Assembly (NCBI GenBank): GCA_037379345.1
Contig: CM074514.1
Coordinates: forward strand, 6,014,001 to 6,078,000
Length of the DNA stretch: 64,000 nt
Origin: Perna viridis
Taxonomy: Eukaryota
Direction: 5' to 3'
In this document: one piece after another, positions 441-58,600 of the stretch
Layout of the letters: every line of letters begins with the position of its first letter
Position numbering within the stretch: the first letter of the stretch is position 1
Program-made: the position numbers and the translations under genes
Notes under the pieces: model-generated
Seen by the model: only the letters and a program-made list of their open reading frames with translations
Database searches by the model: none
What the model was told of the DNA's origin: nothing

Positions 441-3400
441 CTTAAATGAAACAATACCAAAGGATGTAGTTGTTCTTTGATTTTTTACCTGGAAATCCAG
501 ATACTTTGAAAACATGTGTGATACCTCATTATTTTTATGCTTCATTGTCACTTGAATGAAATTACAACATTTGGAAAAATAAAGTTTCTTGGATACTGAA
601 GTTTTAAGTTTAGAATTAAGAAAAAAAAAGTGAAAGAAAAAACATTGAACTATTGCTGCCATCCAAGATTTAGTGAGAGTCACAAATGATACCAAATTGC
701 TTTTATCATTTTAAATATTCTAAACTCCTTTCCATCTAAGTTTAGGAGATGTTGCACAGTTCAGCTATTAATCATATTATCTTCAGTTTGTATTATCTAA
801 ACACAAAAACATCTTTCATCAAGTTTTGAAAATCTATGTTAAATATCCAACATTCATATCATTTTAAGATTAACAAGAAGTGGTTTCAGAAGACAGACAG
901 ACAGACATTTTCAAAAGATTAAAAGTCATTAAGAAGAGCAGATACAGATTGAGTCTTTGTCTAAATTGTCATAGCCTACATGGTTTCTCTGTTGAAGTGG
1001 TTCCTTGGTTTTCCTCATGGGAACAAATGACACCAGCATCTTCAGTGTGGTCACAGTCATGTTTAGCCCAGGTAGAGTGATGACAACTATCTATACTTCT
1101 CTCTGAGCTGTCACATACTACATCATCTAACCATATTAGACCAGACCCTTGTCCATAACTACCTCCTATTTTAGCTATTCCAGAACTATAAAATTATATT
1201 AAAAATGGAATAAGTGTAGGTCTAGGAAAAGGTGTATACAAAAAAATATTTAATAGTATTATATAATATTCTCCTAAACTTTCATTACTTTACTCAATAA
1301 AGGTTATAGGTACGTCTTATCATATTAAAGGACCATTATTAATAGTTGAAGTATGAGCAAGCTCTCAAAGAGAATACCTCTGCTTAAAAAGAAGGTAAAT
1401 ATTTAATGTATAAAACCTTTAGGTCTCACTAACCACTTCTAACATTTCCATTACTTTACTTGTTAAAAATGTAATTTTCAATGTTTCACAGGACAAATGA
1501 TATCTTAAAGTTATATACTTGCAAAGCTTGGAAAATAAGGCTTTCAAAAACTTTATGCAAATGGATTGATGATTGTAGAAATTCTTCAAAAAATTTACTT
1601 GAATAAATAAAACTGAAAATCCACATTGTTACCTTTTCTACTTACTGACAGCATAGAGGCGAATTACTCACACATGTAAACAATATTTATACACTTTTGT
1701 AGTAAATTACAAATATGATATTAAAGTACAAATCCTTAGCTTCATTTTGACTACTTTTGATCAGAATACACACAAATAATGTACTTACAGTGCATAGATC
1801 TATATTCATTATGTTTTTGGCACTACATAGGGGGTGGTCAATTGACCCAGAAGTGTTTAGCGAGGCCTTAAGTTGGATTATTTCCCTTTAGAGCATACTG
1901 ACTATAAATATACTTCTTTATGCACATCTATATACACTGCTTAATGTTCCTATGAATTTCATTAGAATCTCTTCATATAACAATGCTGTTTGAACCAGGT
2001 GAGCTTAAACATGGTTTGATTGTGTTAATAACAAATTTCTGAAAGAGGCTGACACATATTAAAAATACTGTAAAGGTCATATCCAGTTGAAAAATATACT
2101 GTAGTGAAGAAACCTATAACCCAAACAGTTACTCATATGTAACCAAGCATTCTACAAACAGCTACTATTCTGTAGCCAAACATTCTACAAACAGTTACTA
2201 TCCTGTAGCAAAACATTCTACAAACACTTACTATCCTGTAGCCAAGCATTCTGAAGAAACCTATAAACCAAACAGTTACAAACCTATAGCCAAACATTCT
2301 ACAAACAGTTACTAACTTGTAACCAAGTATTCTAAACAGTTACTATCCTGTAACCAACCATTCTACAAACAGCTACTATCCTGTAACCAAGCATTCTACA
2401 AACAGTTACTATCCTGTAGCAAAACATTCTACAAACACTTACTATCCTGTAGCCAAGCATTCTGAAGAAACTTATAAACCAAACAGTTACAAACCTATAG
2501 CCAAACATTCTACAAACAGTTACTAACCTGTCACCAAGCAATCTACAAACAGTTACTATCCTGTCATCCAGCATTCTACAAACACTTAATAACCTGTAAC
2601 CAAGCATTCTACAGTTACCATCATGTAACCAAGCATTCTACTAACAGTTACTAACCAGTAGCCAAGCATTCTACCAACAGTAACTACCCTGTAACCAAAC
2701 ACTCTACAAACAGTTACTAACCTGTAACCAAGCATTCTACAAGCAGTTACCATCATGTAACCAAGCATCCTACTAACAGTTACTAACCTGTAACCAAGCA
2801 TTCTACAAGCAGTAACTAACCCGTACCAAGCATTCTACAAACAGTAACTAACCTGTAACAAAGCATCCTACTAACAGGTACTAACCTGTAACCAAGCATT
2901 CTACAAAAAAACACTATCCTGTAGCCAAGCATTCTGAGGAAACCTATTAACCAAACAGTTACTAACCTGTAACCAAGCATTCTACAAACAGTTACTATTC
3001 TGTAACCAAGCACTCTACAAACAGTTATTATCCTGTAACAAGCACTCTACGAACAGTTACCATCCTGTAACCAAGCACTCTACAAACGGTTACTATCCTG
3101 TAACAAAGCACTCTACAAACAGTTACTATCCTGCAGTCAAGCATTCTGAAGAAACCTATAAACCAAAAAGTTACAAACCTGTAGCCAAGTATTCTACAAA
3201 CAGATACTATCCTGTAACCAAGCATTCTACAAACAGTTACTATTCTGTAACCAAGCACCCTACAAACAGTTACTATCCTGTAACCAAGCATTCTACAAAA
3301 ATTTACTATCCTGCAACCAAGCACTCTACAAACAGTTACCATCCTGCAACCAAGCACTCTACAAACAGTTACTATCCTGTAACCAAACACTCTACAAACA

Positions 3401-6400
3401 GTTACTATCCTGTAGTCAAGCATTCTGAAGAAACCTATAAACCAAACAGTTACAAACCTGTAGCCAAGCATTCTACAAACAGATACTATCCTGTACCAAG
3501 CATTCTACAAACACTAAATAACCTATACCAAGCATTCTACAATCAATTACCATCATGTAACCAAACATCCTACTAATAGTTACTAAGCAGTAACCAAGCA
3601 TTCTACCAACAGTAACTATCCTGTAACCAAACACTCTACAAACAGTTACTAACTTGTAACCAAGCATTCTACAAACAGTTACCATCATGTAACCAAGCAT
3701 CCTACTAATAGTTACTAACCTGTAACCAAGCATTCTACAAGCAGTAACTAACCTGTACAAAGCAATCTACAAACAGTAACTAACCTGTAACCAAGCATCC
3801 TACTTACAGTTACTAACCTGTAACCAAGCATTCTACAAGCAGTAACTAACCTGTACCAAGCATTCTACAAACAGTAACTAACCTGTAACCAAGCATCTTA
3901 CTAACAGTTACTAACCTGTAACCAGGCATTCTACAAAAAATACTATCCTGTAGCCAAGCATTCTGAGGAAACCTATAAACCAAACAGTTACAAACCTGTA
4001 GCCAAGCATTCTACACACAGATACTAACCTGTAACCAAGCACTCTACAAACGGTTACTATCCTGTAACAAAGCATTCTACAAACAGTTACTATCTTGTAA
4101 CCAAGCACTCTACAAACAGTTACTATCCTGTTTCCAAGCATTCTGAAGAAACCTATAAACCAAACAGTTACATAGCTATAGCAAAGCATTCTACAAACAG
4201 TTACTATCCTGTAACCAAGCACTCTACAAACAGTTACTAACCTGTAACCAAGCACTCTACAAACCAAACAGTTACTATACTGTAACTAAGCATTCTACAA
4301 ACACTTAATAACCTGTAACCAAGCATACTACAGGCAGTTACCATCACGTAACCAAGCATCCTACTAACAGTTACTAACCTGTAACAAAGCATTCTACAAA
4401 CAGTTACTAACCTGTAACCAAGCATTCTACAAAAAATACTATCCTGTAGCCAAGCATTCTGAGGAAACCTATAAACCAAACAGTTACTAACCTGTAGTCA
4501 AGCATTCTACAGTTACTTTCCTGTAACCAAGCATTCTACAAACAGTAACTAACCTGTAACCAAGCATTCTACAAACAGTTACTATCCTGTAACCAAGCAC
4601 TCTACAAATATTTACCAACCTGTAACCAAGCACTCTTCAAACAGTAACTAACCTGTAACCAAGCATTCTACAAACAGTTACTATCCTGTAACCAAGCATT
4701 CTACAATCAGTTACCATCATGTAACCTTGCATACTACTAATAGTTACTAACCAGTAGCCAAGCATTCTACCAACAGTAACTATCCTGTAACCAAGCATCC
4801 TACAAACACAAAATAACCTGTACCAAGCATCCTTAAACAGTTACCATTATGTAACCAAGCATCCTACTAACAGTTACTAACCTGTAACCAAGCATTCTAC
4901 AAGCAGTAACTAACCTGTAACAAGCATTCTACAAACAGTAACTAACCTGTAACCAAGCATTCTACAAAAAATACTATCCTGTAGCCAAGCATTATGAAGA
5001 AACCCATAAACCAAACAATTACTAACCTATGACCAAGCATTCTACTAACAGTTACTATTCTGTAACCAAGCACTCTACAAACATTTACCAACCTGTAACC
5101 AAGCACTCTCCAAACAGTAACTAACCTGTAACCAAGCATTCTACAAACAGTTACTATCCTGTAACCAAGCATTCTACCAACATTAATTAACCTGTACCAA
5201 GCATTCTACAAACAGTAACTGTAGCCAAGCATTCTACAAACAGTTACTGTAGCCAAGCATTCTACCAACAGTAACTTACCTGTACCAAGCATTCTTCAAA
5301 AAGTAACTGTAGCCAAGCATTCTACAAACACTTAATGACCTGTAACCAAGCATTCTACAAACACTTAATGACCTGTAACCAAGCATTCTACAGTTACCAT
5401 CATGTAACCAAGCATTCTACTAACAGTTACTAACCAGTAGCCAAGCATTCTACCAACAGTAACTACCCTGTAACCAAACACTCTACAAACAGTTACTAAC
5501 CTGTAACCAAGCATTCTACAAACAACTGAAGCAGCATGATCATCCCACAAGTCATCACAGATAGTACCACGAACACCATTACGAATTATTTCTACCCTCC
5601 CTTCACTCTGTGTTCCATTTACAAGTTCAATGTTTAGTGCTGGAAATGTCAAAATCACACCACTGCTGTATTTTTCGCTGGTAAAAGATGATTGTTTTGG
5701 CCAGTCTAGACTGAATTATTGTTCACTTCCACTTATGTAGTGATCTTTTAATAAAATTGTTTATTAATCATTATACATTTCATTAGAACTTAGTGTCCTT
5801 TTCTAGGTTAAGTTTCACAGAATTGTAAGTAAAATAAAATTTAAACATGTACATAAAATAAAATCAATTATTATGATCAAGTTTTGTTTATGATGTATTG
5901 TAGACATTTGAACTTCTATACCCCTCATTTTCCGTAATGAGTCTAAAGTTAACTAATGGAAATTTTAACAGACTTTTTGGAAAGCCCTATAAGGCATACT
6001 CTAAAGCAAACAGAAAAAAATTGTAATCTCTTGTGTTGGAACACATTCAACTATTGAATAATGTAATTTTCAAATTTATTTGAAATGCTTCCATATCAAT
6101 TGAGGTCTGACTTATATATTTCTGATCCTTTTGAATGATTTAAGCTGAGGAAAATTTATGTGACAGACAATCATTATAAAGGGCAGGTGGACTGCACTAT
6201 AGCATACTACGTTAGTCAAAATAATGTGTACCTACCACAGTCAGTTTCATCCGAGTTGTCATGACAATCATCATCAGAATTACAAACCAGACTCGTAAGA
6301 ATACAGTTTTTGTTAGAGCAGGTAAATTCATCAGGATTACATGCTGAAGTAATTAATAATGTTAACTCTGATTTGGTTTACATTAATTATGATTTCCATA

Positions 6401-12400: not shown

Positions 12401-15400
12401 GGACGTTAGCTGCTAGCTCAGACTCCATAAATAGCATACATTTAGGATGAGATGAAGACCAAGACATTAGCTGCTAGCTCGGACTCCATAAATAGCATAC
12501 AACTAGGATGAGATGAAGACCGAGACATTTGCTGCTAGCTCAGACTCCATAAATATCATACAGCAAGGATGAGATGAAGAGCGGGACATTAGCTGCTAGC
12601 TCGGACTCCATAAATAGCATACAACTAGGATGAGATGAAGACCGAGACATTTGCTGCTAGCTCAGACTCCATAAATAGCATACAGCAAGGATGAGATGAA
12701 GAGCGGGACATTAGCTGCTAGCTCAGACTCCATAAATAGCATACAACTAGGATGAGATGAAGACCGACACATTTGCTGCTAGCTCAGACTCCATAAATAG
12801 CATACAGCAAGGATGAAATATATGTTGTGGTAAGGTTCTTTTTCATTTCCAAGGAACAATTGATGACTGTCATCTTTGATATTAACAATACTGCATGTGT
12901 ATTACATATCATATCAACAATAATACATGTGTATTACGTATCATATCAACAATACTACATGTTTATTACATATATCAACAATACTACATGTGTATTATGT
13001 ATCATATCAACAATACTACACATGTATTACATATCATATCAACAATACTACAAATGTATTACATATTCTAATATGACGTCCTTAAAAGGCTTTATCAGCT
13101 GTGGTCGATTTTCCATTGCTTTATGGGCAGCATGTGACTTATCAGGTGTGGCTTTTGTGTTTGTATATAACTACCCACCTTAAATCATGCAGACAAACAC
13201 ACATAATGTTATTCGGATGTGTTTCATCTGTTTCATTCATTTTAGTAGCAAGATCGAAGATTAAATCCGTATTTATCAAAAATATTAGACGTTATGTTTT
13301 AATAAAATTACAAACATACATGGTAGCAATCACCACATTCACCATCCATGTATGATAACAAACAATAACAATCGTCAATGAATGACATGTTTCAGTCCAG
13401 GCGTTGTACCTGTCCATGTGTGATCTTATAATGTAAACAACTAGTGCCATATCAAACATCATTCTACTTAATTCACCCTTTCTTTCATTTTAAATAATAT
13501 TACAAAGCACTAAGTTTCACTACCAACCATTGACATAGTGTAAAATGTACAGCCAAATTGGGTAAATATGATGGGTGTAAGGTCACCATAATAGGTCACA
13601 AAAATGTAAAATAAGTACCGTAATTGCCCTATTAGAATTGAAATAAATGACAGAAACTCCATTTTATCATTGTTTTACCACAGGCTGACAATTTATGTCA
13701 AAGTTTTACCCCTCAGTGTCATTTGGGGTTAAATAATGTGGCATAAATGGTCAGCCCGTGATAAAACAATGATAAAATGGAGTTTCCATGATTTATTTCT
13801 AAATCATATTAACAATTCTACATGTGTATTAAATATCATATCAACAATACCACATGTGTATTACATATCTCTAGACAGGAACATAATTCCCACCAAATCT
13901 TTAAGTTGAATCAGAAGTACAACTTGTCAAGATGAAGCTAAATACAAAATTTCAAATCATATTATATATAAAGGGATCTTTAGTTTTGTTATGCATAATC
14001 TACAGTACCAGTAAGTATATCAAATACTACAATATATTGAATGATAATAACTAAACCTGCCATCCAGAACATACTGGTCATATAGATAAGAAATAGATGA
14101 CTATTAGAAGTAAGTACTTTACCACAGCCATCTTCATCAGAGAAATCTTGACATTGATCTTTTCCATCACAAACAGCAGTAAAAGGTATGCAGCGTCCAT
14201 TCTTACACCTAAAACTCTCAGGGCATGACAGATCTGAAATGATAACCAATATAAATAACTCTCAGGGCAAGACAGATCTGAAATAACATCCAATATTATA
14301 GCCACCCATATGCTATTTCTGGAGTTATGAAGTTAAATTCTGTGAAATGCTTCTTTATGTTCTCTTTTTTCCTTAGCAGGGTTCACTGTGGAACTGTTTA
14401 ATAAATATTTTATGAAATTTGAATTTATAAGGAGTTATGGACAAGAAATGGGTACCCCCATGATGTTATGGAATGATCAAGTCCATGTACCTCAAATAAC
14501 AATCACATCAAAATTAATAATAGGAAGTACATGTACTATATGTTTACTGGAAAAAAGGATAATGTAACCATCACAGAGGGCTCCAGCTGGTCATATTATA
14601 AAAAAAACCACCTATTTGAAAGACAAAACCAATTAAACATTTTTTTCTTAATTCATGTTCTGCATTGGCCTTTTATTTTTTTCATATTTGGAGCTTCTGA
14701 AGTGTAACAGAGCAGACATTTATATTGGTCAGAGGGTATCCAAATAAAACTTTTAGTAGTGGTAATGTAACCTGCAAAAATCATTCATATGTCTTGAGGT
14801 CAAAATTCAAGGCCAAAAGTCACACATCGTCTAGACGTGTTCTACTTGTCATGTCAAATATTAAATGCCTACACTAAATGAAAAAAATATACAGCTGGAC
14901 AGATGGACAGATTGATCCTTAAAAGATGTCCACCACTTTTTGTGGTGGGGCCAAATAACTTCCCAAAACCAACAAATATTAGATTAATTGATTCCAAGTG
15001 AAGAAACTCGTATACCATATTGCAATTGATTTCAATAACATCTATTTCTTTCTTCCAATCTTTTGAATGCATAGCAAAGAATCAATTATGGTTTTTCAAG
15101 AGGTGATAATAAAAGTGCAGGATTACAATCCCAAAATATACTTTAACTGTCTGTTTAACCTTAAAATTCAGATTTCTGGTACTCAAATAATATATATGTA
15201 GACAGTCTTGTTGCAGGATTAAAACACATTAGATTTATATACAGTCATAGGTAATTATCAGTGGTTAATATAATTTTATGTGATAAATTATCTTACTTTT
15301 TTGTGAATCCAGCTCATAGAAATCATAATCAATAGAAAAGGAGAGTTGACCTGTGGAACTGCTATCTTCTGACAAAAGGCATTCCCTTGCACTTTTCTTG

Positions 15401-18400: not shown

Positions 18401-21400
18401 TTAGCCAAATAGAATGATTATTACAAAAAGCAATATCACCATAACAAAGACTGACACCATTCCTGAGAAATACATTATCAAAATTCCAGTGCCATCGTCT
18501 AAGCAAAGTTTCATTTTCATTTGTCACAAAGCGGTACCCTTAAAAAAAATACGCAATACAGTGAGTGATAATTGGGATGTTTTTGGGGTTATGCTACCCT
18601 TTTGTTAAAGATTTGGCCAAAAATGAGCTGCAAATAATAAAAAAGGAACTCCCTTTCTTTATATAAGTTTCTTGATCAGGTCCACTACCCCCTTTTTGTT
18701 AATATTTAGATCCACCAGGCCTGCATGAAATATCTAAAGATGGCTATTTCAATTGGTACTCATCATTCCTCTCTTTATTTTATTTCTTATTTTTATTTTT
18801 TATTTTTATAGTCTAGCAGGGTTTTCGTTTCTAGCTAAACATTAAATGGTTCATTATGCATATAAATTGAATATATGGACAGTGAATGACTGGCTTATTG
18901 GGGTAAAGATAAGAGGTTAGAGGTCAACCATTTTTAATTTTTAATTTTTAATTCTAATTAATCAGCATATTTAGTTCGCAGTAAAAGTTGCTTATTAGGT
19001 TAGTTAATTGACATGAAATTTGATAGAAGTACAAATGTACATATAAAATGGACTTAACTATCTGCATTTGAACCTAAATAGGGTATGTCAATGTAACTAT
19101 TTTACTGCAGTAGTGTACAATAATTGCAGAAGCTGTCAGGCATTACAGTCTAAAGGCTCTGGCCACTGTTATAATAATTCTGATCTTTGATCTAAATTGA
19201 TAAAAAGAAAGTAAAACCACAAAAATTATTTTATCAAAGTCAGAGTTCAAGACCAAAAGTCACCAGTAACCATGATATATAGTTTGCCACACACTGTTTA
19301 CCCACATGCCAAATATCAAAAGCCTATCCAATAAGACAAAGAATAACAGCTTGTACAGTTTTTTTTATATTTCTTAAATGATAAAATACACAAAATTTGA
19401 CCTGAAGGAAAAATTTAAAGGTTGAAAATAACCAACCATAGTTTGTGAAACGCTGTCTTAAAGTCTACTTACATGCCAAATATTAAAAACCTAACTAGAA
19501 AAACAAAACCCCATGCAGGATTTGAAACATGAAAAAGAAAAAAAATTACCTCAAAGTCAACATTCAGGTCAAAATATAATAAGTAAAAGTACTTTGCACA
19601 TTTTCCTGAAAGTTGTCTTCTTGTATGCCACATATTTAAAGCCTAAAAAATTACAGCTCAGACACAATTTGCTACAGACATACAGACTGATTACTTAAAG
19701 ATGTCTGCCATTTTTTGTGGCAGGGCCCTAATCTATAAAATGACATTAGATATCAGTAATCCCTATACCACAGACAACTTTACTTTCATTAGTAACAGTA
19801 TCTCATAGTCAACTTATCTTTCTAAGTTCTACATTATATCACATCTAACTACATCTTCAACAGTTTAATACCATATTACATACTTATTTTCCAAAGCCAA
19901 CTGAATCTTAAACAGTTTTACACCACATTAAATATTTTCCCACCAAGCCAACTCTATCTTCAACAGTTTTATACCATATTAAATATTTTCTCACATCTCA
20001 CACCAGACAACTCTATTTTCAACAATTTTATGCCACATTACATATTTTCTCACCACAGCTAACTTAATTTTCAACTGTTTTACACCATATTACATATTTA
20101 CTTTCTAAAGCCAACTCTATCTTCAACAGTTTTACGTCACACTAAATATTTACTCTCCAAGCCAACTTAATCTTCAATAGTTTTACACGACATTAAATAT
20201 TTTTCTAACTACAGCCAACTTAATCTTCAACAGTTTTACACTACATTAAATATTTTTCTAACTACACTATATTACATATTTACTCACCACAGCCAACTTC
20301 ATCTTCCCCACCATCACAATCATTCTCTTTGTCACAATGGAAACTTTCTGGTATGCATTCAGTCTCATACCTACGAAAGTGAGAACATGAAATAATTCAT
20401 ATTTTTATTCAAGTTAAAGGTTTGTTACATTGTGCCTCTGGGAATCATCTTTCATAAATTTAAATTCAATTTAATGCCAATTTAAGTATGAACAGCGATA
20501 AAAATTCAAATATAACAATCTCTTCAAATTAGACCTAACAATAAATCTGTGTTAGTGATAGACCAACAATCCAACCTTGGCCATGATATCAACTGAGGAA
20601 TAAACCAAAACAATTTGTCACAACTTCATGGAGCTTGTGTCAAAATATCAACTGTGGTTACAGAGAAAACTGTTATGCAAATTTAAATATCAAAACCATT
20701 AGGTCAAAATACCGGTATACCAAGTCAGCAGACAGGAAGTTGTTACAAAAGCCTGAAATAAAATCCCATGATATGTCATATCTGCAAAAAGCTTGTATCA
20801 AAATATCAATTTATTATTATAAGGAACAGTACTTGATGGAAAAAGTATGACAGACAGACAGACAGACAGTATATCCCCCTTTGGAGCATGAGTATACACA
20901 TTTGTGATTGATGTTGAATGTTAGGAAGTAATCCTTATATAAATTCTGCAGATTCTTGTAACTTACTCAGGATTATTTCTATAGTTGTAGCAATAAAACT
21001 TTCCTATTGGACATTCATTTGGTGCAACTGTAACAGAAAAGATTGATTTAGCAATTAGAATCATCAATAACATTTGGTAGTAACCAAAGAAATGTTTTAT
21101 GGGTTAAGAGAAAAAAAATAAATACTTAAATCTACATATCATGGAATTTCATTTATATTACAATAATGTGACTGACAGTAATCCATGATTGTAACAAAAA
21201 TTTAATGCTTTCACAATAGTACTACAACGTTTGTAAGGTCAAATTAAGTTAATTTGTTGATTCTCATTCCAGTCCAACCCATTTCAAAAGACCCCATCCT
21301 AATATATATTTTTATTTTCAATATTTTTCAGCAGTTCAAAGTCCCAGAATTTGTTCATATCCCTATTTGTCATGACACTTCTTTTACACAATGGCTATTG

Positions 21401-30345: not shown

Positions 30346-30707
30346 AATAGTCAATAATATGATATCATTTGTATTAGACATCTAACCACCCTATATATTT
30401 AGAAAGAAAATCAATCTTGGTAGTTACCTCTTAAGGGTGTTTCTTTTCTTGTCATTACAGGTATATATTACACATAAGGCACCCAGTCTTTGTTGGACAT
30501 GGGAGATTTCCATTTATCTGATATATTGGGCCCTCTTCTTTCATCAGACATTGGGATTCCCATTCATATCAGATGTTGAGGTCCCCTTTTAATCTAGCAC
30601 AGGTAGATACAACTTGAAAATACTGAACCCTGGTCTAGAAAGGTTGTTTACTGACTAATTTCATGTTTCAAATCAATTGTCAGGGGGGATAATTCACAAA
30701 AGGGTAA

Positions 30708-34100: not shown

Positions 34101-34645
34101 AGATTCAAAAGGGTTTCTTAAAATTATAAATAAACAAAGGCGTTACATTACCTTTACTTTTAGGTTTTCATCAATGATTATAAAAAGGATCAATAATAGA
34201 AAATGTAAAATGAAACAATAGTGTTTATATGTTCTGAACACATTTTTATTATGCCATAATACTGGGATATTGCAATTACAATGACTTAAAGTTATCAAGC
34301 AGATGAAAGGTTTGAATGTTTATAAGAAGTACTGACAAGCCAATCCTATTTAATACAAACTCACTACATAAAAATCATCAGTAGCATAAAGATAATTTCT
34401 CTTCATTTTCTTGACCAAGTTAATTTTTAGTATAGGACTCATTTTGTAAGAAATTAAACATTAAAAAGTCATAAAAAATATACATAAGAAGGAAACATAA
34501 AGATAAGAAACTCATAGATTGTCAACAAGTGGAAAACATGACAAAAAATTGCATAAAATATCACAATAACAGGCATGATTTCTTGTGATCCCATAATACC
34601 TCCCACAACAATGATGACCAAAGGAATTATGTCAAATCACAATAC

Positions 34646-37600
34646 TCATTTCAGATCAGAAGCATCCCTGGAAAAACAGAATAAAAAAATCAATTAAATA
34701 TCTTTCTGCATAGTATAGAGTTTAATTCATTTTTTAAAAGTAAAAATCAGAACAAGCCTCAAAGTTTTTGTTCATTAACTTGCATTATAACTTAAAGGAA
34801 ACTTCCATGCAAAAAGAATTCAATTAACTATCATTCCATGGCAGGTTTTTCTAGAAAAGCAGAGGACCTTACCCTACCAGTGCACCTGGTCCATGCTCCA
34901 AGTTTTCAGTGGAGTCCGAGTTGCTCATTTGCTTTTGTTACTTTGTATGTATGATTTTAGTTTATGTTCTTTGTTGTGTTTGTCTGTTTTCCATGTCTGG
35001 TCTTTGTCCCTGGATTATATTCTTTTGATTACTGCTATAACCATGGTTCCCTTGATTACTCTTCCATATAAAAGTCACATGATAGAAACTGATTCCATAC
35101 CATTGTGTGTTTTTGTATTTGTTTTTAACCTTTTTCTTCAAAATTTGAAGTTTTCTGTATATAACTATCGATGTACATAAAGCATATTTCCATGCATTCT
35201 AACTTCTATTGAAATTCCTGACAGTATCAATTAAGTGCAAAAAAAAAAACACCAGCACTTAGGACATTTTTTCCTAAGTTAAAGAACCACATTAAGTACA
35301 TTTCTAATCTTTGATCATGTAAAGTAACACTTTCTGTGATTTGGTTACTTTATCTACATCTAGGATCATTTGCCATTACAACTGGTTGTGTGATTGTGTC
35401 ACTTTGTCTATGAATTTTGATTGGTCAAAAGAATGGTAGTAATATTCCTAATGTTGTTCTCCAATAATGGTGACCTCATAGATTGTTACACTACAATGGT
35501 GGATGTCAAAGGTAAAGTAGTGTATGGAACCACAGAGAAAAAGTTTCATAACTCGTTAAACTTAAACATCCAAAAAAAATTAATTTGCTTTATTTAATTT
35601 CAACATCATAACAAACTCACCAAGGCTTGATTGTTATGATGTTGGAATTAAATTAATGGAGTTAATATTTTGCAATATTTTAGTTTCACTCATTACCAAA
35701 CTTATGATTATTAGTATTTACTTACTGGATGTTAGGAGGACCATCTGTTGTTTTCGGAGTTTCTGGACCTGGATTCTCTGTTGTCTGATAAAACATTTAA
35801 GCAAGATAAAAAGGTGAAAAACCTACTTTAGCCATAAATGAACTCAATAATGATATCTCTCTTTCATTAATATGAGTAAAACTAGTTTTTTTGGTTTTCT
35901 CTACACGTACATTTTCCAGAAATGTTTGATAGCTAGCACTGAATTTGTTACTGTTCAGCAAACTACTTTGTTAGGAAAAAACACTCAAAAATATATCCTC
36001 ACTTTCACTACTTTCTCTAAATCTTTAAAAAGCTGTTTAAGTTGCTAATCCTGTTCTATACAAAACATTCAAGAAAGAAATAACAGATGGATTTATTCTT
36101 CACTAAATAGTTTGCAAGTTTTTACACAGCAAAATATCTGAAGAATTATGAAATTTAGTGAATAAACCATTTCTACAATAATTCCAAAAAGACCATCCTC
36201 TAAACAAGCTTACACACTCTTTTCACCAGATTTTCTTTAGATGATATGATGTAGATTTATGTGAATTACATGTACCTGTTGCAAAGTTGTTTCTGATGCA
36301 GGTAAAATAGATTATTGTGATTTACTTGTTGTGGGGGTGTTTTAGATGTAGACAAAGTAGATTCCTGTAACTTACCTGTTGTGGAGGTGTTTTAGATGTA
36401 GATGAAGTAGATTCCTGTGACTTACCTGATGTAGAGGTGTTTCAGATGTAGATAAAGTAAATCCCTATGACTTACCTGTTGTGAAGGTATTTTAGATTCC
36501 TGTGACTTACCTGTTGTGGAGGTGTTTTAAACATAGGTGCTGAAGATTCCTGTGACTTACCTGATGTAGAGGTGTTTTAGATGTAGATGAAGTCGATTCC
36601 TGTGACTTACCTGTTGTGGAGGTGTTCTTGATGTAGGTGATGTAGATTCCTGTGACAACTCACTCCTTATTTCCTGTGCTGTTTTAGTAGGCTCTCCAGT
36701 TGAGTCCTTTTTAAACAGATTTGTCTTGGCTTTAGCCTCTTTCTGTTTTTTATATGTATCTTCCTGAATCTGCATATGGTATTTATAAGTAGATTCTGTG
36801 CTTGCCATAGTACCTAAACACAATACAAACAATAAAATACTGCAGGTTCAAATCACATCAATTGCTGGAAGGTGCACAAAAATGCAATACTCTGGGGTTC
36901 AAATTCACATCAGTCATTTAAATGTTTACTGTATTTTCCTGACTATAAGTCAATGTGGAGTATAAGTCGAATTGCCTAATTTTGACCAAATACCAAAGAT
37001 AAGTCAAACTCGGCAGATAAGTCGAGGGTCAGACATGTGTGTCAGCGGACACCTGAGTTGAGCTGTTTGTTTTCAACATCATATTATTCCAGCGATGTTA
37101 CTAAGTATAATATTTCTGAATTAAATTAATAATTGTTTTTTTGTTAAAGTGTACCTTGCAAGCAAGTTCAATCATATTTATTGAATGGGGTGTCACTGGC
37201 TCTGAAGCCTTAGATCATCAGGTGTACGAAATCATAAGCATGTCAAACGTGGGCATCCATGTGTGAAATAAGCGGGAAATTCATTTAATGAATTGGTCAT
37301 AATTACAAGCAGTAATTAATAAATAATATTAACTGGTATTACAAAATACAATAAAAAATAATTGTTAGCTACAAATTTGGTTGCAATTTGCCATTTAGAT
37401 AACACCTTAACTAATTTTAATTTGAGCCACGACCGAATGTGTTAAAACACACTGTAAATGGGTATAAATTTGCATATTAAAGGACCGATAACTCCAGAAC
37501 ACTCGATAATGTCTTTCCAGTTAAAAATTGTTTTGTTAACGTATCAAAGAACACTCTCTGTAATAAACAAGAACAATAAAAAAAAACTGATCCAGGGCAT

Positions 37601-40600
37601 TATATTCCTATTTTCTAGGGAAAGTGAAATTTTTCATGAAGAATTCATTTCATTATAGACATAATAAGTAATTTAATAAGGTTTTTTTCTCCAGCCTCTT
37701 ATATACAATAATGCTAGTATCTATGTTAAAACAGTCATTTATACACTGTAGTGACAGTTAACAACCATTACAGACGTTGAACACAAGTAATAAAACTTCC
37801 ATCTGTACAGTTATGGCAGTGTTTTGAATACAAAAAATACATGTATATGTTGTTGAAGGAATGATTTCAAGTCTTTCAAATAATTAACTATAGTTGATCA
37901 TACCAACCTGACTTGAGATTAAATGTCCTCCCCTTCACTAAGTCCTTGGGTGGGGGTGACCACCAATTTAACAATGAACCAACCAGGGGAACTTGTCTTA
38001 AAACGCCCTGGGGAATAAAATAAGATATATAATAACCTACTTAACTTAGTTATCATCGACTTATTTTTAATGCTTAATAATTGATATACTTTATTGCTGC
38101 GATAACAATACATAGTCCCCTACCAGGTGCAATATAAAAAAGAAAAGATTTTAACTGTGTAAATTATTGTTTAAATTTGGATTGTGATTTTTAAAAAATG
38201 TTTGACACAGCAAATCAAAATGACAGTGGTGAACAAACTTTAAAATTTTCAATAAGACATGAAAAATAAGTAATTTCTATGAAGTTGAGGAATTTGCTTT
38301 AAATATTTCTGACCCTTTAATTCCTAAAATGTGAGAGGCATAACCCTTTCAAATAACAAAACCTTTCTGTAATAGTAGTATGTAACCTAGTGGTACAGTT
38401 GCATTGAGATCCATTCATTTTCACTAAAGTTATTGCCTGGGAACAAAGAAAATGTTTTAGGCCCCTTTTGTTTATGATCATCATCCCCAAAATCAATCCA
38501 GTCTTATTTCTATTTGCATTGAACCTTCTGATATAATACAGAAATCAATATCATATACTCAAGAACTAAAGTAAAGTTATATATAAATGCCTGCTTCTGG
38601 CCCCTATACATAATTATTTAGGATTTTTACCCTAAAAATCATTCAAAATCTCTATTTTTTGTAGTATGGAACCATATGTTACAAGATAATAGAGATCCAT
38701 GCACTTTACTGCATGCTATAGTGAGGAAATCTGAAAAAAAATATGTCCCTTTTTGGCCCCTGATTCCCAACTGGTAAGAACCATAGCCTCTAATATTAAT
38801 ATCAGCCCCCCAAAATAAACAGAAAGATTATCAAATTATATGTTCATTTATAAACAATATGATATAAATATGTTTTTACCTCTTGTTGTAATTTATCCTG
38901 TGATTCTTTCTCCAAGTCTTTGTTGGCTATCTCAATTCCTTGTTTAATCAAATCTGCCAGAGCTTCAAAATACTGAAACACATTAAAGAATCTTTATGGA
39001 GTATGATGTATGCAGTGTTAATATAAAACATGAGGTATACAAATATTAGAAGTGAAACTATTAATTGTTAATAGATGAAAATGATAACAGACACCAAGTG
39101 AGCTCAAAAGTAAGAGCACCCATGTGCATGTTTTATCATTCGTTTAGTATAAAAGACCCAATTTAAAAAAGATACCTCAAGGTTAGTTATACTCAAATTA
39201 AGTTTTAACCCAGTAGTTTCAGAGGTAAAAAGAACTGTAATTGTAAACAAGAAAAAAATAAATTTGAGTTTGCTTTAATTGCATTCTTCTGAAAGCACCA
39301 GACAAATTGCAATAATAGGCTGGAAGGGCATACCAAGTTATTGGCCTATTCTTAGCTACTTCGTCCCCTGCTGTTAAAAAAATATTTAGACTTAATTTTA
39401 CTTAAACATTGTTAAGAGTTGCCATGTCAATGGGTCAGGCTGAAAAAAGGTCAGATTGATGGGTACTTTTTATGAAAGAAAAAAAACATGTCTCTTAAAA
39501 TTAACCTACAAATAATTGTGAAGCAGAAAAAAGACTAATAGTAAAATATTCTTCTAAAAAAATAGTGTTTTTTTTTAGTTTTGACTCCATAAGAGCGAAT
39601 TTCAGGAACCTATGTAATATTCTTGTGCAGACAGAAAGAAAAAAATTGCATAAACATGCTTATTACCTTTGAAGATTCTTCAATTTCTTTTCCACATTTA
39701 AGAACATGATCTATTAATTCTTCTACATCTGTATCATCAGTAATCAATCCAAACTTAACACAAGCCAATTCATTCTCTAACCGACCTATAACAAAGCGAT
39801 AACATCGTAACTGTACATCCGCCCTATACTCTACAATTCATTTGTTTGAATTGTCTAACCGACCATATAACAAAGTGATAACATTGTAACTGTACATCTG
39901 CCCTATACTCTGAAATTCATTTGTTTGAATTGTCTAACCGACCTAGAACAAAGCGATAACATCGTAACTGTATATCTGCCCTATACTCTACAATTCATTT
40001 GTTTGAATTGTCTAACCGACCATATAACAAAGCGATAACATTGTAACTGTACATCTGCCCTATACTCTGAAATTCATTTGTTTGAATTGTCTAACCGACC
40101 TAGAACAAAGCGATAACATCGTAACTGTATATCTGCCCTATACTCTAAAATTCATTTGTTTGAATTGTCTAACAGACCTATAACAAAGCGATAACATCAT
40201 AATTGTACATCAGACCTTTTGTCTGAATTGTTGAAATTTCAACCCTAAAGTTATTGCTCTTTGACAATATGTATTAATAATTGATCTTTAAAGAAATCAT
40301 AAACAACCTGATGTAGTAGTGACTTCTCACTTGGCAAGCATGATAATTGTTTGTCTGAGTACTTATACAAATGAAACCCAACCTCTGTAAAAAGTTTCAT
40401 CAAAGTCAGTTGAACAGTTAAAATAGAGTTGTTCATACCAAGTACATAGATTAACAGACAAAATAGATAGATAGGTATAGTTTTGCTATAAACCCCTAAA
40501 TACTTAGTCTGCGGTGAGAGGGTAATTACCCAATACTTTGTCTGCAGTGAGAGGGTAATTATCCAATACTTAGTCTGCGGTGAGAGGGTAATTACCCAAT

Positions 40601-43600
40601 ACTTTGTCCGCAGTGAGAGGGTAATTACACGATACTTTGTCAGCAGTGAGACGGTATTTTCCCAATACTTTGTCTGCAGTGAGAGTGTAATTACCGAATA
40701 CTTTGTCTGCGGTGAGAGGGTAATTACCTGATACTTTGTCTGCAGTAAGAGGGTAATTACCTGATACTTTGTCAGCAGTGAGAAGGGAATTTCCCGATAC
40801 TTTGTCTGCGGTTAGAGGGTAATCACCCAATACTTTGTCTGCAGTGAGAGAGCATAACTACATTGTCTACTTTTATTTCTAATAACAACATACCAAGAGA
40901 AAATGCAGTATCTGTTGCCTTCAGTTTCTTCACTAATTCTACATTAACAGTGTTAATCTCATGTTTATTCTTTGTAGACAAATGTTCAGTATGATCAACA
41001 CAAGACTCTGGTAGATATCTATAAAACAGTATGTTAGAGATATTGATTAATCTAGAGGACCCAAGCAGCTTGGCAAAAATGTGGGCACTGCTAGAAATAT
41101 AGGGTCAGTGAAATAAAAACACCTAAACACTCACACAATCTTATTGAAAGATATCTACTGAAACATATTTCTGGCAATCATACAGCAATTACTTTTGTTT
41201 TGATGAAGAGACTCATCGAAAGCCCTGGAGATGCCACTGCCAAAACGAAAACATGAACAACTGACATATTTCCAACACCATAAGTTCAGATTTTAGTTGT
41301 ATTGTCAGTGTTTCAGTGAGAAATCTTTTTCAGTGGTATATGAATTAAATAAAAGTCTCCTCATTCTTTGTAACTATACACAAACTTTATTTTCAAGCAA
41401 AAAAAACAGAAACCAGAAAAAATGTGTCTAAAGACATGGTAGCCCTGTCATTTCTAATTCTCGCAGTGAATAAAAGAACAGTGTTCCAATGTCCTCCGCA
41501 TACAAAGAATTTTGTAAGTCCAAGGGCCGTAACTTCCGTAAAAATCATTCAAACTCAAAGTGTAATTTCTCCTAGTAAGTCACATACAAACGATAAAATC
41601 AATTGGTAAAAGCATTACAAAAAACGTGTGGAAAACCTTAAATTCACTGAAATTTTCTAAGTCCAACGGCTGTAACTTCTGTAAAAATCATTCAACCATA
41701 AGCAAAGTCGAACATAATTTGTAACTCTCCATACACAGGCAAAAACATGAGAATCATATGGTTTGCATCTATGATTATCATATAAATCGAGCACCGTATG
41801 ATAATCATATGTTTCGGTATACAATTGATTATCGCATGATTATCATATGATAATCATATGTTTTTTTCACAAACATATGACTGTCATATGTTTTTAAGCC
41901 AAAATTACCATATGAATCAACACCATATGATTATCATAAGAGCATTACAAAAAAATTGTGGAAAACCTGGACAGACGGACACCCAGCATTTCCATGTCCC
42001 CTCGTGTCACGTTGTGGGGACAAAAAGATTATTTTGAAGGGAAATACAATGACCTGACTGTGAGATGACAATTTTCATTGCACCAATTTTCATTGCACCA
42101 ATTTTCATTGCACCAGAATTCCAATGTCCTAATGATGCACTCTAGACTGAACACTAGGTAAATGACAGCATAACATGTGACTGACTCAGTGAAGATGTTA
42201 TATTCGACTACAACAATGTAGGAAGGTCTTACATTGAAATCATTAATATGACTTGTTACAATAACATAACTATATAGGTAATGTGAAAAACTAAGTGTTA
42301 ATGATTAGACATGAACTTACTGTACTACACCTAATCCTGCCCATTTTGGCATTTCTATCAACTTGAAGTTCTTGTGCTTAGTCACAAGGGCTTTAAATTT
42401 ATCTCTCTGTGCTACTGTAGCATCTAATATGTTCTGGATAATAATTGTTAGACATATTATTCAGTTTGACTGTTTTTTGACCATATATATCAAACATATT
42501 TACAATATTTTGTATTTTCTATGTTTATTGATGAGTTTATTCAATAATAACTTCTTACTATGTAAATATTAACATCTAATAATAATAGAAATTCTGATCT
42601 TTCTACCATACTTCATCTTACTATTTGGAAGTCTCATCAAATTTATAAAGTTAAAGGTTTAAGCAATAAATCACCTACTGTTTGCTCCTTTAGTTTTGTT
42701 ATGGCTACCTCTATATCTTCAGGTTTAATATTCCTGACTGCAAAGATCATTATAAAATTATTAATAAATTTAGAATAACCAGACTGAAACAAACTGTTCC
42801 AGCTCAATAGGACAACAGAAGCCAAACCCTGAATACCTGAGTATATCATAGACAGTATAATTAAAAAATACTGATAAAACAATAATTTGAAATTTTGATT
42901 GTGATAAATGACACAGCAAAGGTTACTGACGCAGAACGATTGTGGTCAAAGAACTTTAAAATTGGAAATTTGACATTTACCAACTACAACCCAAGATCAT
43001 TATCCAAATACACCATTATAATTTTGGGATTGTCTAAAAGGCTATAAAGACAATACAACATAAACTGATTAAAAATCCGTAAACTTCTGTGCAAAACTTT
43101 TCAGCATTATTTATAGAAAAGTTTTATCAAGCATAAAAAAAATCCTGTAACATACCTTGAGCACATTCCAGGGGAGCAAAACGTATACAGATTCCTTCTT
43201 TTTCTAATTTTACAATCTGGAAATTCAATTTAGGACATTCCATTTGTAAAGTTTCTCCAAGCTGAAAAAAAAACAAAAATCATAAACTGACTTCAGCAGT
43301 TCCAGTAATGAAAATGTATTATTATATATTCTAACATGACATGCTTCAGATCTCTATAGACTACATCAATGGCCAACACATGGTAAAACAATAATAAAAT
43401 GAAGTTGCCAAGATTTATTTCTTTAACAAGCTGAATGTGGTCATAAAGAAAAATAAGTACCAAACATATCCCAAATGAAAAAAAAAACAGATAACAGGTT
43501 AGACATCACACCACACCATACGTTAATAATAAGCACTGCATCCACTATCAGGGTTCATACACCTTTTTTGCTCCAATTTTCCAGGATTTTTCCAGGACTT

Positions 43601-55600: not shown

Positions 55601-58600
55601 AATTTGTGACAAACTTACCAAGTGAAATTTGTTCATTTCGGCCCTCACACACAACTGCAATTTTAGTAAATTTTCCTTGTGCCCAATACACCTAAACTAT
55701 ACTTTTTTTCTAAAATTTCCGAAGCCAAGAAGAGGTGCAAGGAATACATGCATGTGGGATATACACAGAAGAATATGGTAACTAGAGTAGTAGATTATTG
55801 TAAGTACAAATAGTGTGAAATCAATCTCACAAAAAAATTATCTCTGCTTTAATGGGACTTTAAACAAGTAAAACTTATGTTGGATTGTCTTTTCTTGTAG
55901 GAATCCAACAATTATCACCTTTTTTCATCAAAGTATGATGTATTATCTTCCTATAAAATTTTATTTGAAAAGACTGCATAATATTTTGCACTTGTATAAA
56001 AAAATATACCTCTTCTTTTTCAAAAAGAGGGGGAATAATTATTAAAAACTATACCTGAACAGTCTCGACAACCATAATTCACAATCTGATATGATCTTAG
56101 ATGTAAATTTCTTGAGATGTTCATCGTCGAGAGTAGATACATAAGCTGACAAACTGTGGGCTGTTAAAGCTACTTTAGCATGGGTGTCTAGTTCTTGTAA
56201 CCTACCAGTACTATAATGATACAGATTCTCAATTATATAGATAGTTAAAGTCTCCATCATTTCAACTGATGTTACATATTGTGATATAAATTTATGTTTG
56301 GTGTCAACACCTAATATTCAGTCAGGGATGTAACCTATTCCACTTATTTTTTAAGTAACTATTTTCAGTTTTGCAAAAATGTAGCTAATAACTTATATCA
56401 GTTATTACGAAAAATGTATGTAATTTTATCCCAAATTTCAAATACAAGATTAATTTTCTTTCAGATGTTTAGATACTTACTAAGTTGATAGACATCTTTA
56501 GTCTAGAATAAATTAATTACAATTGGTGTCTATAGTGGATTATTGTGCCCATGTTCACATTATAACAACACCCATGGGATATTGAATTGAAATTATCTGT
56601 TCCAGACTTTTGAAGCACTTCATTAGGCCTTTACAATGACCTAATTTTAGAAGAAAAAAAAATGAATCAGGTATCATGGGTTTTCTCCTTTTTGTTAAAA
56701 TTAGGAGTTTATCAAATTTTCAAGGGCGAGAACTCTAGCTGCAAAATAACTGTTTCCATTTATCAAATATCAAAATATGTAACTGAATAAAATTAATCTG
56801 TAAAATAACTTCTACAGCTTACACCCCTGACTTAGTATTTGACGAAACTTCAGAATATGACTGGATAGAAATTTTGCATATAGAATATACAATTTTTTTT
56901 TTTACAAATATCACTTCTTTGCAAGAAATACCATCACAAAGAAAGACAATTCAATAAAAGCTAAAGCTTCAATCGAAAACTACGTTGGTTTATTCTTCTA
57001 AAAACTGCCAAGAAATAAATGGCATTTTGTTCCTGGATTTGATCAAAAACTTTTTGCACTTCTTTGAAAAGAAAAATAATTATTGATATTGATTGAAATA
57101 AATCTGTATTCGGAATATTAAAATATTTTTCCCTGCCTACTAACCCACTAAATTGGAGAGTTGGGAAAGGGAACACAATACATAAGACCATACCATTTAT
57201 ATTTATCTGAGGGGACAAAAAAATGGAGGCAATACCATTTATGTTTATCTGTTTCAGATCCTTCCTCTTCCTGAACATCTTCAATGCTTCCAAACAAAAT
57301 CAAATCTTCAACTTGCTTCATGATTTCAACCATATCTTGTCCACTGTTCAAAATAAAAAGTAAAGAAATAAATCATATGTCTGGTAATGAACTAGACTAC
57401 AGAAATAATCACAGAAACTGAATCACTTGTCTGGTAATGAACTAGACTACAGAATATCACAGAAACTGAATCACATGTCTGGTAATGAACTAGACTACAG
57501 AAATAATCACAGAAACTGAATCACATTCTGGTAATGAACTAGACTACAGAAATAATCACAGAAACTGAATCACATTCTGGTAATGAACTAGACTACAGAA
57601 ATATCACAGAAACTGAATCACATGTCTGGTAATGAACTAGACTACAGAAATAATCACAGAAACTGAATCACATTCTGATAATGGACTTGACTACAGAAAT
57701 AATCACAGAAACTGAATCACATTCTGGTACAGAACTAGACTACAGAAATAATCACAGAAACTGAATCACATTCTGGTAATGGACTTGACTACAGAAATAA
57801 TCACAGAAACTGAATCACATGTCTGGTAATGAACTAGACTACAAAAATATTCACAGAAACTGAATCACATTCTGGTAATGGACTTGACTACAGAAATAAT
57901 CACAGAAACTGAATCACATGTCTGGTAATGAACTAGACTACAAAAATATTCACAGAAACTGAATCACATTCTGGTAATGGACTTGACTACAGAAATAATC
58001 ACAGAAACTGAATCACATGTCTGGTAATGAACTAGACTACAGAAATAATCACAGAAACTGAATCACATTCTGGTAATGAACTAGACTACAGAAATAATCA
58101 CAGAAACTGAATCACATGTCTGGTAATGATCTAGACTACAGAAATATCATAGAAACTGAAACACATGTCTGGTAATGGACTTGACTACAGAAATAATCAC
58201 AGAAACTGAATCACTTGTCTGGTAATGAACTAGACTATAGAAATAATCACAGAAACTGAACCACATGTCTGGTAATGAACTAGACTACAGAAATAATCAC
58301 AGAAACTGAATCACATTCTGGTAATGAACTAGACTACAGAAATAATCACAGAAACTGAATCACATGTCTGGTAATGATTTAGACTACAGAAATATCATAG
58401 AAACTGAAACACATGTCTGGTAATGGACTTGACTACAGAAATAATAACAGAAACTGAATCACTTGTCTGGTAATGAACTAGACTATAGAAATAATCACAG
58501 AAACTGAACCACATGTCTGGTAATGAACTAGACTACATAAATAATCACAGAAACTAAATCAAATGTCTGGTAATGAACTACTTAACAGAAATAATTATAG

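What the first reader, a model, noticed from the sequence alone, without database searches (positions are those of the whole stretch)
2105..57252. Recurrent splice-junction-anchored tandem repeats: six exon boundaries in two genes amplified into ladders of duplicated splice sites
Seen directly: six unrelated arrays have a unit that spans an exon-intron junction. The real exon is the terminal copy and the array grows into the intron. Donor cases: mosaic exon 18 (33 bp x ~100), mosaic exon 11 (~56 bp x ~9), PDXDC1 exon 22 (50 bp x 8), PDXDC1 exon 3 (42 bp x 2). Acceptor cases: PDXDC1 exon 19 (78/79 bp x 6), mosaic exon 14 (44 bp x 2). That is 6 of about 85 junctions in 64 kb. Copy number and divergence range from a fresh doublet to a 3.4-kb array, like a life-cycle series, and many copies have lost the GT or AG. 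Established: tandem duplication of AG|GT-containing sequence is a proposed route to intron gain (Rogers model), and YAG|GT is the recursive splice-site motif. Inference: a process may nucleate or retain minisatellites at exon ends, for example transcription- or splicing-coupled slippage or breaks. It would create decoy, alternative or recursive sites that selection later silences, or provide a VNTR-based dial on splicing.
Basis: partly seen in the sequence, partly recalled or inferred. Interest (0 to 1): 0.85.

Follow-up and report, generated by a model that had tools for sequence, protein, structure and literature searches.

The report
Splice-junction minisatellites ("mirages") in a mollusc
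Six tandem repeats in two neighbouring genes really are built from an exon end plus its splice site, but this is a known kind of repeat (amphioxus "mirages", human F7 intron 7). In this repeat-rich mollusc genome it is only about twice as common as matched chance predicts, and the cell splices only at the genuine copy.

Summary
All six arrays have a unit that spans an exon-intron junction, and the exon-proximal copy is the terminal one. For the two arrays I could test with RNA (PDXDC1 exon 22 donor x8, exon 19 acceptor x6), spliced contigs show only the exon-proximal site in use: three runs from three studies for the donor, two for the acceptor.

The phenomenon recurs. In 229 kb of unrelated genes from the same 723-Mb genome I found nine more cases, in SRCR, fibronectin-3 and myosin exons. 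Other readers of this scan noted similar arrays elsewhere in this genome.

The proposed junction-specific nucleating process is not needed. A matched control asks how often a random intronic 24-mer is the end copy of a local tandem duplication.
- Independent sample: 4.2-4.8 junction cases expected, 9 seen (about 1.9x, P 0.03-0.05; P 0.11-0.16 at a looser match threshold).
- Window: 2.3-2.6 expected, 6 seen.

Slower divergence from a selectively frozen first copy could alone give up to 2x. Donors are over-represented (8 against 2.3 expected) and acceptors are not (1 against 2.0). This fits a tolerance filter but leaves room for a donor-specific effect. Loss of GT/AG is heterogeneous.

The kind is already described: amphioxus "mirages" and the human F7, IFI6, CBS, LMNB2 and PDGF minisatellites. 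This is a new, very abundant instance in a mollusc.

The parts
2122..5524 (-). 33-bp x103 donor array. Its first copy holds the last 20 nt of an SRCR N-half exon (exon ends at 5501, GT at 5500-5499) plus 13 nt of intron. It fills 3.4 kb of a roughly 4.3-kb intron.
   Evidence: Pfam SRCR match ends at the junction. 96 decoy copies, 48% keep GT.
5501..5613 (-). SRCR N-half exon (Pfam-matched part) that anchors the 33-bp array. The SRCR C-half exon follows at about 985-1190.
   Evidence: profile positions 5-44, then 53-100 in the next exon. The same split occurs in more than 50 paralogous SRCR exons genome-wide.
19853..20310 (-). 52-bp x about 8 donor array. Its first copy holds the end of an LDLa exon (exon ends at 20288, GT at 20287-20286).
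14213..14296 (-). 44-bp doublet that duplicates an acceptor (TTTCAG) plus the first 21 nt of an LDLa exon. The real exon starts at 14233.
   Evidence: Only the downstream copy keeps the LDLa reading frame.
36273..36660 (-). 50-bp x8 donor array. It contains seven perfect CAG|GTAAGT sites; the first (exon 22 ends at 36611) is the one used.
   Evidence: RNA joint 35784/36611 in three runs and absent from the DNA run.
36611..36813 (-). PDXDC1-like exon 22 (S/T/P-rich tail). All four runs carry a 12-nt insertion after 36685 relative to the assembly.
39772..40211 (-). 78-bp x5.6 acceptor array. The last copy is the real acceptor. Three of the five decoys keep AG.
   Evidence: RNA joint 39785/40894 in two runs.
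39667..39785 (-). PDXDC1-like exon 19 (PDXDC1-like_cen2 domain).
57165..57260 (-). 42-bp doublet of AAATG|GTAT. The presumed PDXDC1 exon 3 donor follows 57236; the second GT is at 57193-57192.
   Evidence: only. The boundary is not verified by RNA or by homology.
40499..40850 (-). 33-bp x10.7 purely intronic array that starts 40 nt after the exon 18 donor. It is not junction-anchored and is included as a contrast.

Best explanation
These are 'mirage'-type minisatellites. Ordinary local tandem duplications are extremely frequent in this AT-rich mollusc genome. Some of them happened to include an exon-intron junction and then expanded by slippage or unequal exchange. They survive because splicing keeps using the exon-proximal copy: the first of the tandem donors and the last of the tandem acceptors. 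All other copies therefore stay inside the intron and the mRNA is unchanged. Their number is close to what the local duplication rate and the short introns (median about 480 nt) predict. The roughly two-fold surplus is expected because the functional copy is frozen by selection, so an anchored array stays recognisable for longer. The donor-over-acceptor bias reflects tolerance. Downstream decoy donors are ignored, as in human F7. Upstream decoy acceptors can capture the branch point, so they are removed or inactivated. Shown here: the anatomy, the site usage for two arrays, the recurrence and the rates. Inferred: the mechanisms of duplication and expansion, the detectability factor and the selective filter.
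For: Anatomy of the six arrays. RNA: only the exon-proximal donor and acceptor appear in spliced contigs; the DNA run lacks the joints. Recurrence: nine further junction-anchored arrays in 229 kb from other chromosomes, in SRCR, fn3 and myosin exons, each with a different unit. Matched control: 1.35% of pre-expansion intronic 24-mers are the end copy of a 16-160-nt tandem duplication against 2.9% of junction cores (9 of 312). That gives 4.2 expected (P 0.028), or 4.8 with region-specific rates (P 0.053). Per-intron placement test: 2.2 expected, 4 seen, P 0.17. Window: local rate 3.06%, 2.3-2.6 expected, 6 seen. Duplication rates differ from 0 to 8% between regions, which explains clustering in particular genes. 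The SRCR intron position is shared by more than 50 paralogous exons, so the intron predates the array. Literature: the same structures, at both boundaries and without disturbing splicing, are described in amphioxus Adh3, TnC, globin and PGBD5 genes (PMC3087553, PMC3902484). In human F7, IFI6, CBS, LMNB2 and PDGF the most upstream donor is selected (PMC1557585).
Against: A cruder null (TRF arrays seeded uniformly) expects 2.3 against 7-8 seen (P 0.003-0.01). Donors alone are 3.5-fold over the matched rate (8 of 168, 2.3 expected, P 0.002). Genome-wide, triple ladders of the perfect donor 9-mers are 2.7-3.9 times more frequent per site than ladders of their mirror-image controls: CAGGTAAGT 30 loci per 6131 sites against 10-11 per 5865; AAGGTAAGT 19 per 8149 against 10 per 16855. 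A purely neutral model with a tolerance filter cannot by itself raise donors above about 2x. RNA evidence consists of assembled contigs, which drop rare isoforms, and it covers only two of the six arrays.
Confidence: 0.68

Rival explanations
1. A process tied to the 5' splice site favours the birth or retention of tandem arrays there. Candidates are transcription- or splicing-coupled breaks or template switching at polymerase pause sites, or a sequence-intrinsic propensity of GGTAAGT-like motifs. On this view donors are true minisatellite hot spots.
For: Donors 8 of 168 against 2.3 expected (P 0.002) while acceptors are 1 of 151 against 2.0. Donor to acceptor ratio is 12:3 over the window and the independent sample together. 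Perfect-donor 9-mer ladders are 2.7-3.9x per site over mirror controls genome-wide. In my 293 kb, five of the nine arrays known to carry three or more strong donor-like sites are junction-anchored on the sense strand; that count adds the PDXDC1 exon 22 array, which the script's copy-number filter dropped, and a sixth listed array proved to belong to one of the five.
Against: The donor/acceptor split was made after seeing the data. Four of the eight donor cases come from one gene cluster and two from one giant gene. The two mirror controls differ three-fold from each other, so variance between motifs is large. After allowing about 1.8x for the frozen first copy, the donor excess is 8 against about 4.5 (not significant). 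Selection against decoy acceptors alone produces the asymmetry.
Confidence: 0.17
2. The arrays are functional. They could act as clusters of U1-binding decoys that strengthen the upstream donor or suppress premature polyadenylation, as alternative or recursive splice sites, or as a length-variable dial on splicing.
For: In six arrays every decoy keeps its GT or AG, and in a seventh (PDXDC1 exon 22, perfect CAG|GTAAGT sites) six of seven do. The human F7 precedent has a length-polymorphic array of functional pseudo-sites (PMC1557585). The 33-nt period would give in-frame insertions.
Against: No joint at any decoy copy is listed for the RNA contigs of the three runs laid. In 4 of 13 arrays the splice dinucleotide is the most degraded position, and in the largest array about half the copies read GA. 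Periods are mostly not multiples of three. The introns concerned are short (826 and 1108 nt), so recursive splicing has no obvious role. Abundance is close to the neutral expectation.
Confidence: 0.08
3. The arrays are assembly artefacts, produced by mis-collapsed or mis-expanded repeats.
For: Short-read contigs of the DNA run break at the arrays, so their exact copy numbers are unconfirmed.
Against: k-mer depth rises over the arrays in a DNA run of another sample (237 against 63). Contigs from other individuals span two to eight units with few mismatches. Decoy copies carry individual substitutions.
Confidence: 0.02

Closest known systems
Amphioxus 'mirage' minisatellites (Adh3, troponin C, globins BflGb6/9, PGBD5)
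   Same: Tandem repeats whose unit spans an exon-intron boundary. Both 5' and 3' boundaries occur. Many copies keep AG/GT, normal splicing is undisturbed, and units range from tens to about 160 bp. They were already linked to the Rogers model of intron gain (PMC3087553, PMC3902484).
   Different: A different phylum: the best full-length PDXDC1 relatives are from Lottia and Lymnaea. Copy numbers reach 103. Here the frequency is measured (about 3% of junctions in an unbiased sample) and compared with a matched null. Copy-number instability could not be tested.
Human F7 intron 7 37-bp VNTR and the IFI6 (6-16), CBS, LMNB2 and PDGF minisatellites
   Same: The first monomer spans the exon-intron boundary, so the authentic donor is followed by identical pseudo-donors and the most upstream site is selected (PMC1557585). 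PDXDC1 exon 22 behaves the same way: seven perfect donor sites, only the first used.
   Different: The human cases are isolated donor-side examples. Here they are dense and include acceptor-side arrays. In IFI6 and CBS the nearest pseudo-sites are also used, which contigs cannot exclude here.
Rogers model (intron gain by tandem duplication of AGGT-containing exon sequence)
   Same: Tandem duplication creates extra donor and acceptor signals.
   Different: No new intron is created. The arrays sit in pre-existing introns; the SRCR split is shared by more than 50 paralogues.
Recursive splice sites (YAG|GT ratchet points)
   Same: Several units contain CAG|GTAAGT.
   Different: Ratchet points lie in very long introns and are used stepwise. 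These introns are 0.8-4.3 kb, and no internal joints are listed for the contigs laid on the two tested arrays.

Membership tests
Mirage / F7-type junction-spanning minisatellite | Head-to-tail repeat with a unit of roughly 10-160 bp | tested here: met
   TRF periods 33, 52, 50, 78, 44; 42-bp doublet by eye.
Mirage / F7-type junction-spanning minisatellite | The unit contains exon end, splice signal and adjacent intron, and the first or last monomer is the authentic junction | tested here: met
   Junctions fixed by RNA for two arrays and by domain ends and reading frame for the others.
Mirage / F7-type junction-spanning minisatellite | Normal splicing uses the authentic exon-proximal site and the pseudo-sites stay silent | tested here: met
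   Joints 35784/36611 (three RNA runs) and 39785/40894 (two RNA runs); no decoy joints listed. Contig level only, and not tested for the four arrays of the mosaic gene and exon 3.
Mirage / F7-type junction-spanning minisatellite | Copy number is polymorphic or unstable | tested here: inconclusive
   DNA contigs of another sample break at the arrays. Depth is raised but copy number is not resolved.
Recursive splice site | Internal YAG|GT sites are used as intermediate acceptor and donor during stepwise intron removal | tested here: not met
   No joints to internal copies are listed for the RNA contigs; the introns are 826 and 1108 nt. Lariat or raw-read evidence was not available.
Rogers-type intron gain | The intron lies between two copies of a duplicated exonic AGGT segment and is absent from relatives | tested here: not met
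   The SRCR intron lies at the same domain position (profile about 44-53) in more than 50 paralogous exons. The arrays lie inside existing introns.

The most novel reading that the evidence does not exclude
5' splice sites, but not 3' splice sites, are genuine hot spots for minisatellite birth or retention in this genome. They are about 3.5-fold over matched intronic sequence, and perfect-donor ladders are 3-4-fold over mirror motifs genome-wide. This would point to a U1- or 5'ss-linked mutational or selective process. It would also give thousands of natural F7-like ladders on which to test how a spliceosome chooses among identical donors.
Probability: 0.2. Interest if true: 0.65.

Novelty: new member of a known kind. 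Interest (0 to 1): 0.38.

Why it matters
If the ordinary reading holds, the value is descriptive. A mollusc genome carries mirage-type arrays at a few per cent of its splice junctions. This matters for gene annotation, because decoy sites and open frames run into the arrays. It also matters for assembly and for anyone using these loci as markers. It offers many natural experiments on splice-site choice as well: PDXDC1 exon 22 has seven perfect consensus donors 50 nt apart, and only the first is seen in use. If the donor-specific excess is real, it would tie minisatellite origin to splicing signals, which has not been shown.

Tried and rejected
1. The wider genome sample failed. About 70 kinase genes, the remaining SRCR clusters and the kinesin loci could therefore not be read, and the nine kinase seed loci (L001-L009) went unused.
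2. All-against-all ORF similarity as an exon finder was unspecific, because recent DNA-level duplicates match on both strands. I kept only exons supported by an HMM or by a family-search anchor.
3. Automatic junction calls with a splice-site weight matrix gave errors. There were two false junction cases (a misplaced acceptor inside an intronic array at C13, and a non-tandem copy 880 nt away at C8). Three real cases were missed. Two sat where the open frame runs into the array (the window's 33-bp array and the C7 30-bp array). In the third, TRF split one array into three pieces (C7 77-bp). All positives were therefore checked by eye.
4. Arrays that merely lie near a junction were rejected as anchored: window 7410-7979 and 40499-40850, C7 37412-37515, C3 1905-2122, which starts at intron base +3, and C8 4721-4771.
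5. The ladder-pattern test cannot separate junction effects from motif effects, because I could not read the flanks of the 49 ladder loci.
6. A literature search for such arrays in bivalves found nothing specific.
Full report
**What is there**

The window is AT-rich (about 32% GC) and full of minisatellites. TRF lists 34 distinct arrays with a period of at least 10, covering 18% of the 64 kb.

Two genes lie on the minus strand.
- A mosaic gene has SRCR, LDLa and Kringle exons by Pfam, and by eye probably C-type-lectin and PAN exons too (about 1-29000).
- A PDXDC1-like gene runs from about 35600 to 60200. A Lymnaea homologue (P0036) aligns in 20 segments, one per exon.
- The best full-length relatives are from Lottia and Lymnaea, so the organism is a mollusc.
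- The assembly has 723 Mb in 46 contigs, and the window is C4:6014001-6078000.

On the minus strand each of the six arrays has a unit that crosses a junction.

| Array | Window place | Unit | What it copies |
|---|---|---|---|
| SRCR donor | 2122-5524 | 33 bp x103 | Last 20 nt of an SRCR N-half exon plus 13 nt of intron. Exon ends at 5501, and the Pfam SRCR match stops there. |
| LDLa donor | 19853-20310 | about 52 bp x8 | End of an LDLa exon (exon ends at 20288). |
| PDXDC1 exon 22 donor | 36273-36660 | 50 bp x8 | Seven perfect CAG\|GTAAGT sites. |
| PDXDC1 exon 3 donor | about 57165-57260 | 42 bp x2 | AAATG\|GTAT. |
| PDXDC1 exon 19 acceptor | 39772-40211 | 78 bp x5.6 | Pyrimidine tract, AG and about 14 nt of exon 19. 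|
| LDLa acceptor | 14213-14296 | 44 bp x2 | TTTCAG plus 21 nt of an LDLa exon. |

The 42-bp doublet is the weakest case. TRF misses it, and its boundary is unverified.

**RNA and DNA evidence**

I laid contigs of three runs that behave as RNA (spliced contigs of 5.1-5.2 kb) and one DNA run from another sample on 35101-41100.
- The RNA runs share canonical GT..AG joints that the DNA run lacks: 35784/36611, 36813/37908, 38007/38880, 38972/39667 and 39785/40894.
- The 35784/36611 joint is in all three RNA runs, and the 39785/40894 joint is in two.
- The donor in use at exon 22 is therefore the first of the tandem sites, and the acceptor in use at exon 19 is the last.
- No joint at a decoy copy is listed. 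Two unlisted joints and the loss of rare variants in contigs are caveats.
- In the DNA run depth rises over the arrays (237 against 63), and contigs from other individuals cover several units. The arrays are real, but their exact copy numbers remain unconfirmed.

**It recurs**

In this independent sample I located 171 exons. This gave 319 predicted junctions and 80 TRF arrays.

Checking by eye gave nine junction-anchored arrays.
- Four lie in one SRCR cluster on C7, with units of 30, 58, 54 and about 77 bp. TRF had split the last of these into three pieces.
- Two lie in a giant fn3 gene on C13 (30 bp x10, 49 bp x5).
- One lies in another fn3 gene on C8 (35 bp x3).
- One is a 62-bp doublet in an SRCR cluster on C3.
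- One is an acceptor array (32 bp x4) in front of a conserved myosin-head exon on C11.

All have different units, so they are separate events.

Notes from other readers of this scan describe similar arrays in other windows of the same genome, in a K+ channel, dystrophin, dynein, P450, peroxidase and FRAS1. Two follow-ups reached the same 'tolerated, F7-like' reading. I did not verify those notes.

**Is it more than chance?**

The answer depends on the null model.

| Null model | Expected | Seen | P |
|---|---|---|---|
| TRF arrays seeded uniformly | 2.3-2.4 | 7 (8 with the split array) | about 0.003-0.01 |
| Each array placed uniformly within its own intron (introns are short, median 480 nt; 27 arrays) | 2.2 | 4 | 0.17 |
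| Matched 24-mer control, sample-wide rate | 4.2 | 9 of 312 | 0.028 |
| Matched 24-mer control, region-specific rates | 4.8 | 9 | 0.053 |
| Matched 24-mer control, looser threshold (17 of 24) | 5.6-6.1 | 9 | 0.11-0.16 |
| Window, own local rate of 3.06% | 2.3-2.6 | 6 | 0.03-0.05, before allowing for how the window was chosen |

The matched control is the fairest null, because it has the same sensitivity as the detection.
- It asks how often a non-exonic 24-mer has a copy of at least 18 of 24 identical bases 16-160 nt away on one side only. Such a 24-mer is the end copy of a local duplication.
- That rate is 1.35% per pre-expansion position. A mirrored-sequence control puts spurious matches at 0.08%.
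- Region-specific rates range from 0 to 8%.

The excess is therefore about two-fold and of borderline significance.

A two-fold excess is what one expects (an inference) from detectability alone. In an anchored array the functional copy is held constant by selection, so the divergence between it and its decoys grows at about half the neutral pairwise rate.

**Donor/acceptor asymmetry**

- In the independent sample donors are 8 of 168 (2.3 expected, P 0.002) and acceptors are 1 of 151 (2.0 expected).
- With the window added, the ratio is 12 to 3.
- Genome-wide, three exact CAGGTAAGT spaced 25-55 nt apart occur at 30 loci, against 10-11 loci for the mirror-image motif. Single-site counts are equal (6131 against 5865).
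- For AAGGTAAGT the figures are 19 against 10 loci, with 8149 against 16855 single sites.
- In my own 293 kb, five of the nine arrays known to carry three or more strong donor-like sites are anchored on the sense strand. The script listed eight arrays, and its copy-number filter dropped the PDXDC1 exon 22 array. A sixth listed array turned out to belong to one of the five.

This is the one signal that the by-product model does not fully absorb. However, the split was made after seeing the data. The cases cluster in a few genes, and the two control motifs differ three-fold from each other. Selection against upstream decoy acceptors gives an asymmetry by itself.

**Fate of GT/AG**

- In 4 of 13 arrays the splice dinucleotide is the least conserved adjacent pair of the 24-nt core. 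Binomial P is about 0.003, or roughly 0.03 if ties are allowed.
- In the 33-bp array only 48% of the 96 decoys keep GT, against 80% for other pairs.
- In 6 arrays every decoy keeps the site, and in a seventh (PDXDC1 exon 22) six of seven do.
- There is thus some sign of silencing, or of expansion from a dead copy, but no general rule.

**What is known**

- The F7 paper states that several human genes carry minisatellites whose first monomer spans an exon-intron boundary: F7, IFI6/6-16, CBS, LMNB2 and PDGF. It shows that the most upstream of identical donors is chosen (PMC1557585).
- In amphioxus such repeats are called 'mirages'. They occur at both boundaries in Adh3, TnC, globin and PGBD5 genes, do not disturb splicing, and were already tied to the Rogers model (PMC3087553, PMC3902484).
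- I found no report for molluscs.
- The introns here are not new. The SRCR split is shared by more than 50 paralogous exons.

**Verdict**

The kind is known. The new points are its abundance in a mollusc (about 3% of junctions in an unbiased sample, about 7% in this window), the RNA proof of exon-proximal site choice, and a possible donor-specific excess.

The proposed nucleating mechanism is not required by the data. The functional readings have no support so far.

Noticed in passing
window 36685: All four runs laid (three RNA-like, one DNA, from different samples) carry a 12-nt in-frame insertion in PDXDC1 exon 22 relative to the assembly. It is either a length polymorphism of the S/T/P-rich tail or an assembly error.
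   Followed up: no
window 36900-37500: k-mer depth in the DNA run is 9000-20000 against about 60 elsewhere. This marks a very high-copy repeat, presumably a transposon, inside PDXDC1 intron 21. Many loose ends occur at 36927-36990 and 37410-37527.
   Followed up: no
window 57364-58604: A 49-bp x25 array fills almost the whole of PDXDC1 intron 2. It ends about 19 nt before the exon 3 acceptor and begins about 65 nt after the previous exon, without including either junction.
   Followed up: partly
window 16283-16561 (-), 27158-27322 (-), 60269-60550 (+): Three copies of an element share a similar open frame (motif ...SRKAEDVY...GP.SQF...). It is probably a dispersed repeat and not an exon.
   Followed up: no
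window 50604-50972 (+) and 53665-53928 (-): Open frames with a 'LQP(M/L)D' motif, typical of DDE transposase C-terminal parts, lie inside PDXDC1 introns. They are likely transposon remnants.
   Followed up: no
whole genome G000: AAGGTAAGT is only half as frequent as its mirror image TGAATGGAA (8149 against 16855 sites), whereas CAGGTAAGT equals its mirror (6131 against 5865). This may reflect avoidance of strong cryptic donors or a context bias.
   Followed up: no
G000:C7:3866000-3912000 (L012-L016): One SRCR gene cluster holds four separate donor-anchored arrays in 46 kb, and 12% of it is tandem repeat. A similar SRCR cluster on C14 (L017-L020) has none and only 0.9% tandem repeat. Local duplication rates differ from 0 to 8% between regions.
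   Followed up: partly
G000:C4:34523059 and C4:34534016; C11:1919910: Two perfect-donor ladders lie 11 kb apart on the same strand, possibly in one gene. Another ladder lies 15 kb from the myosin exon that carries the acceptor array, but on the opposite strand. Their flanks could not be read.
   Followed up: no
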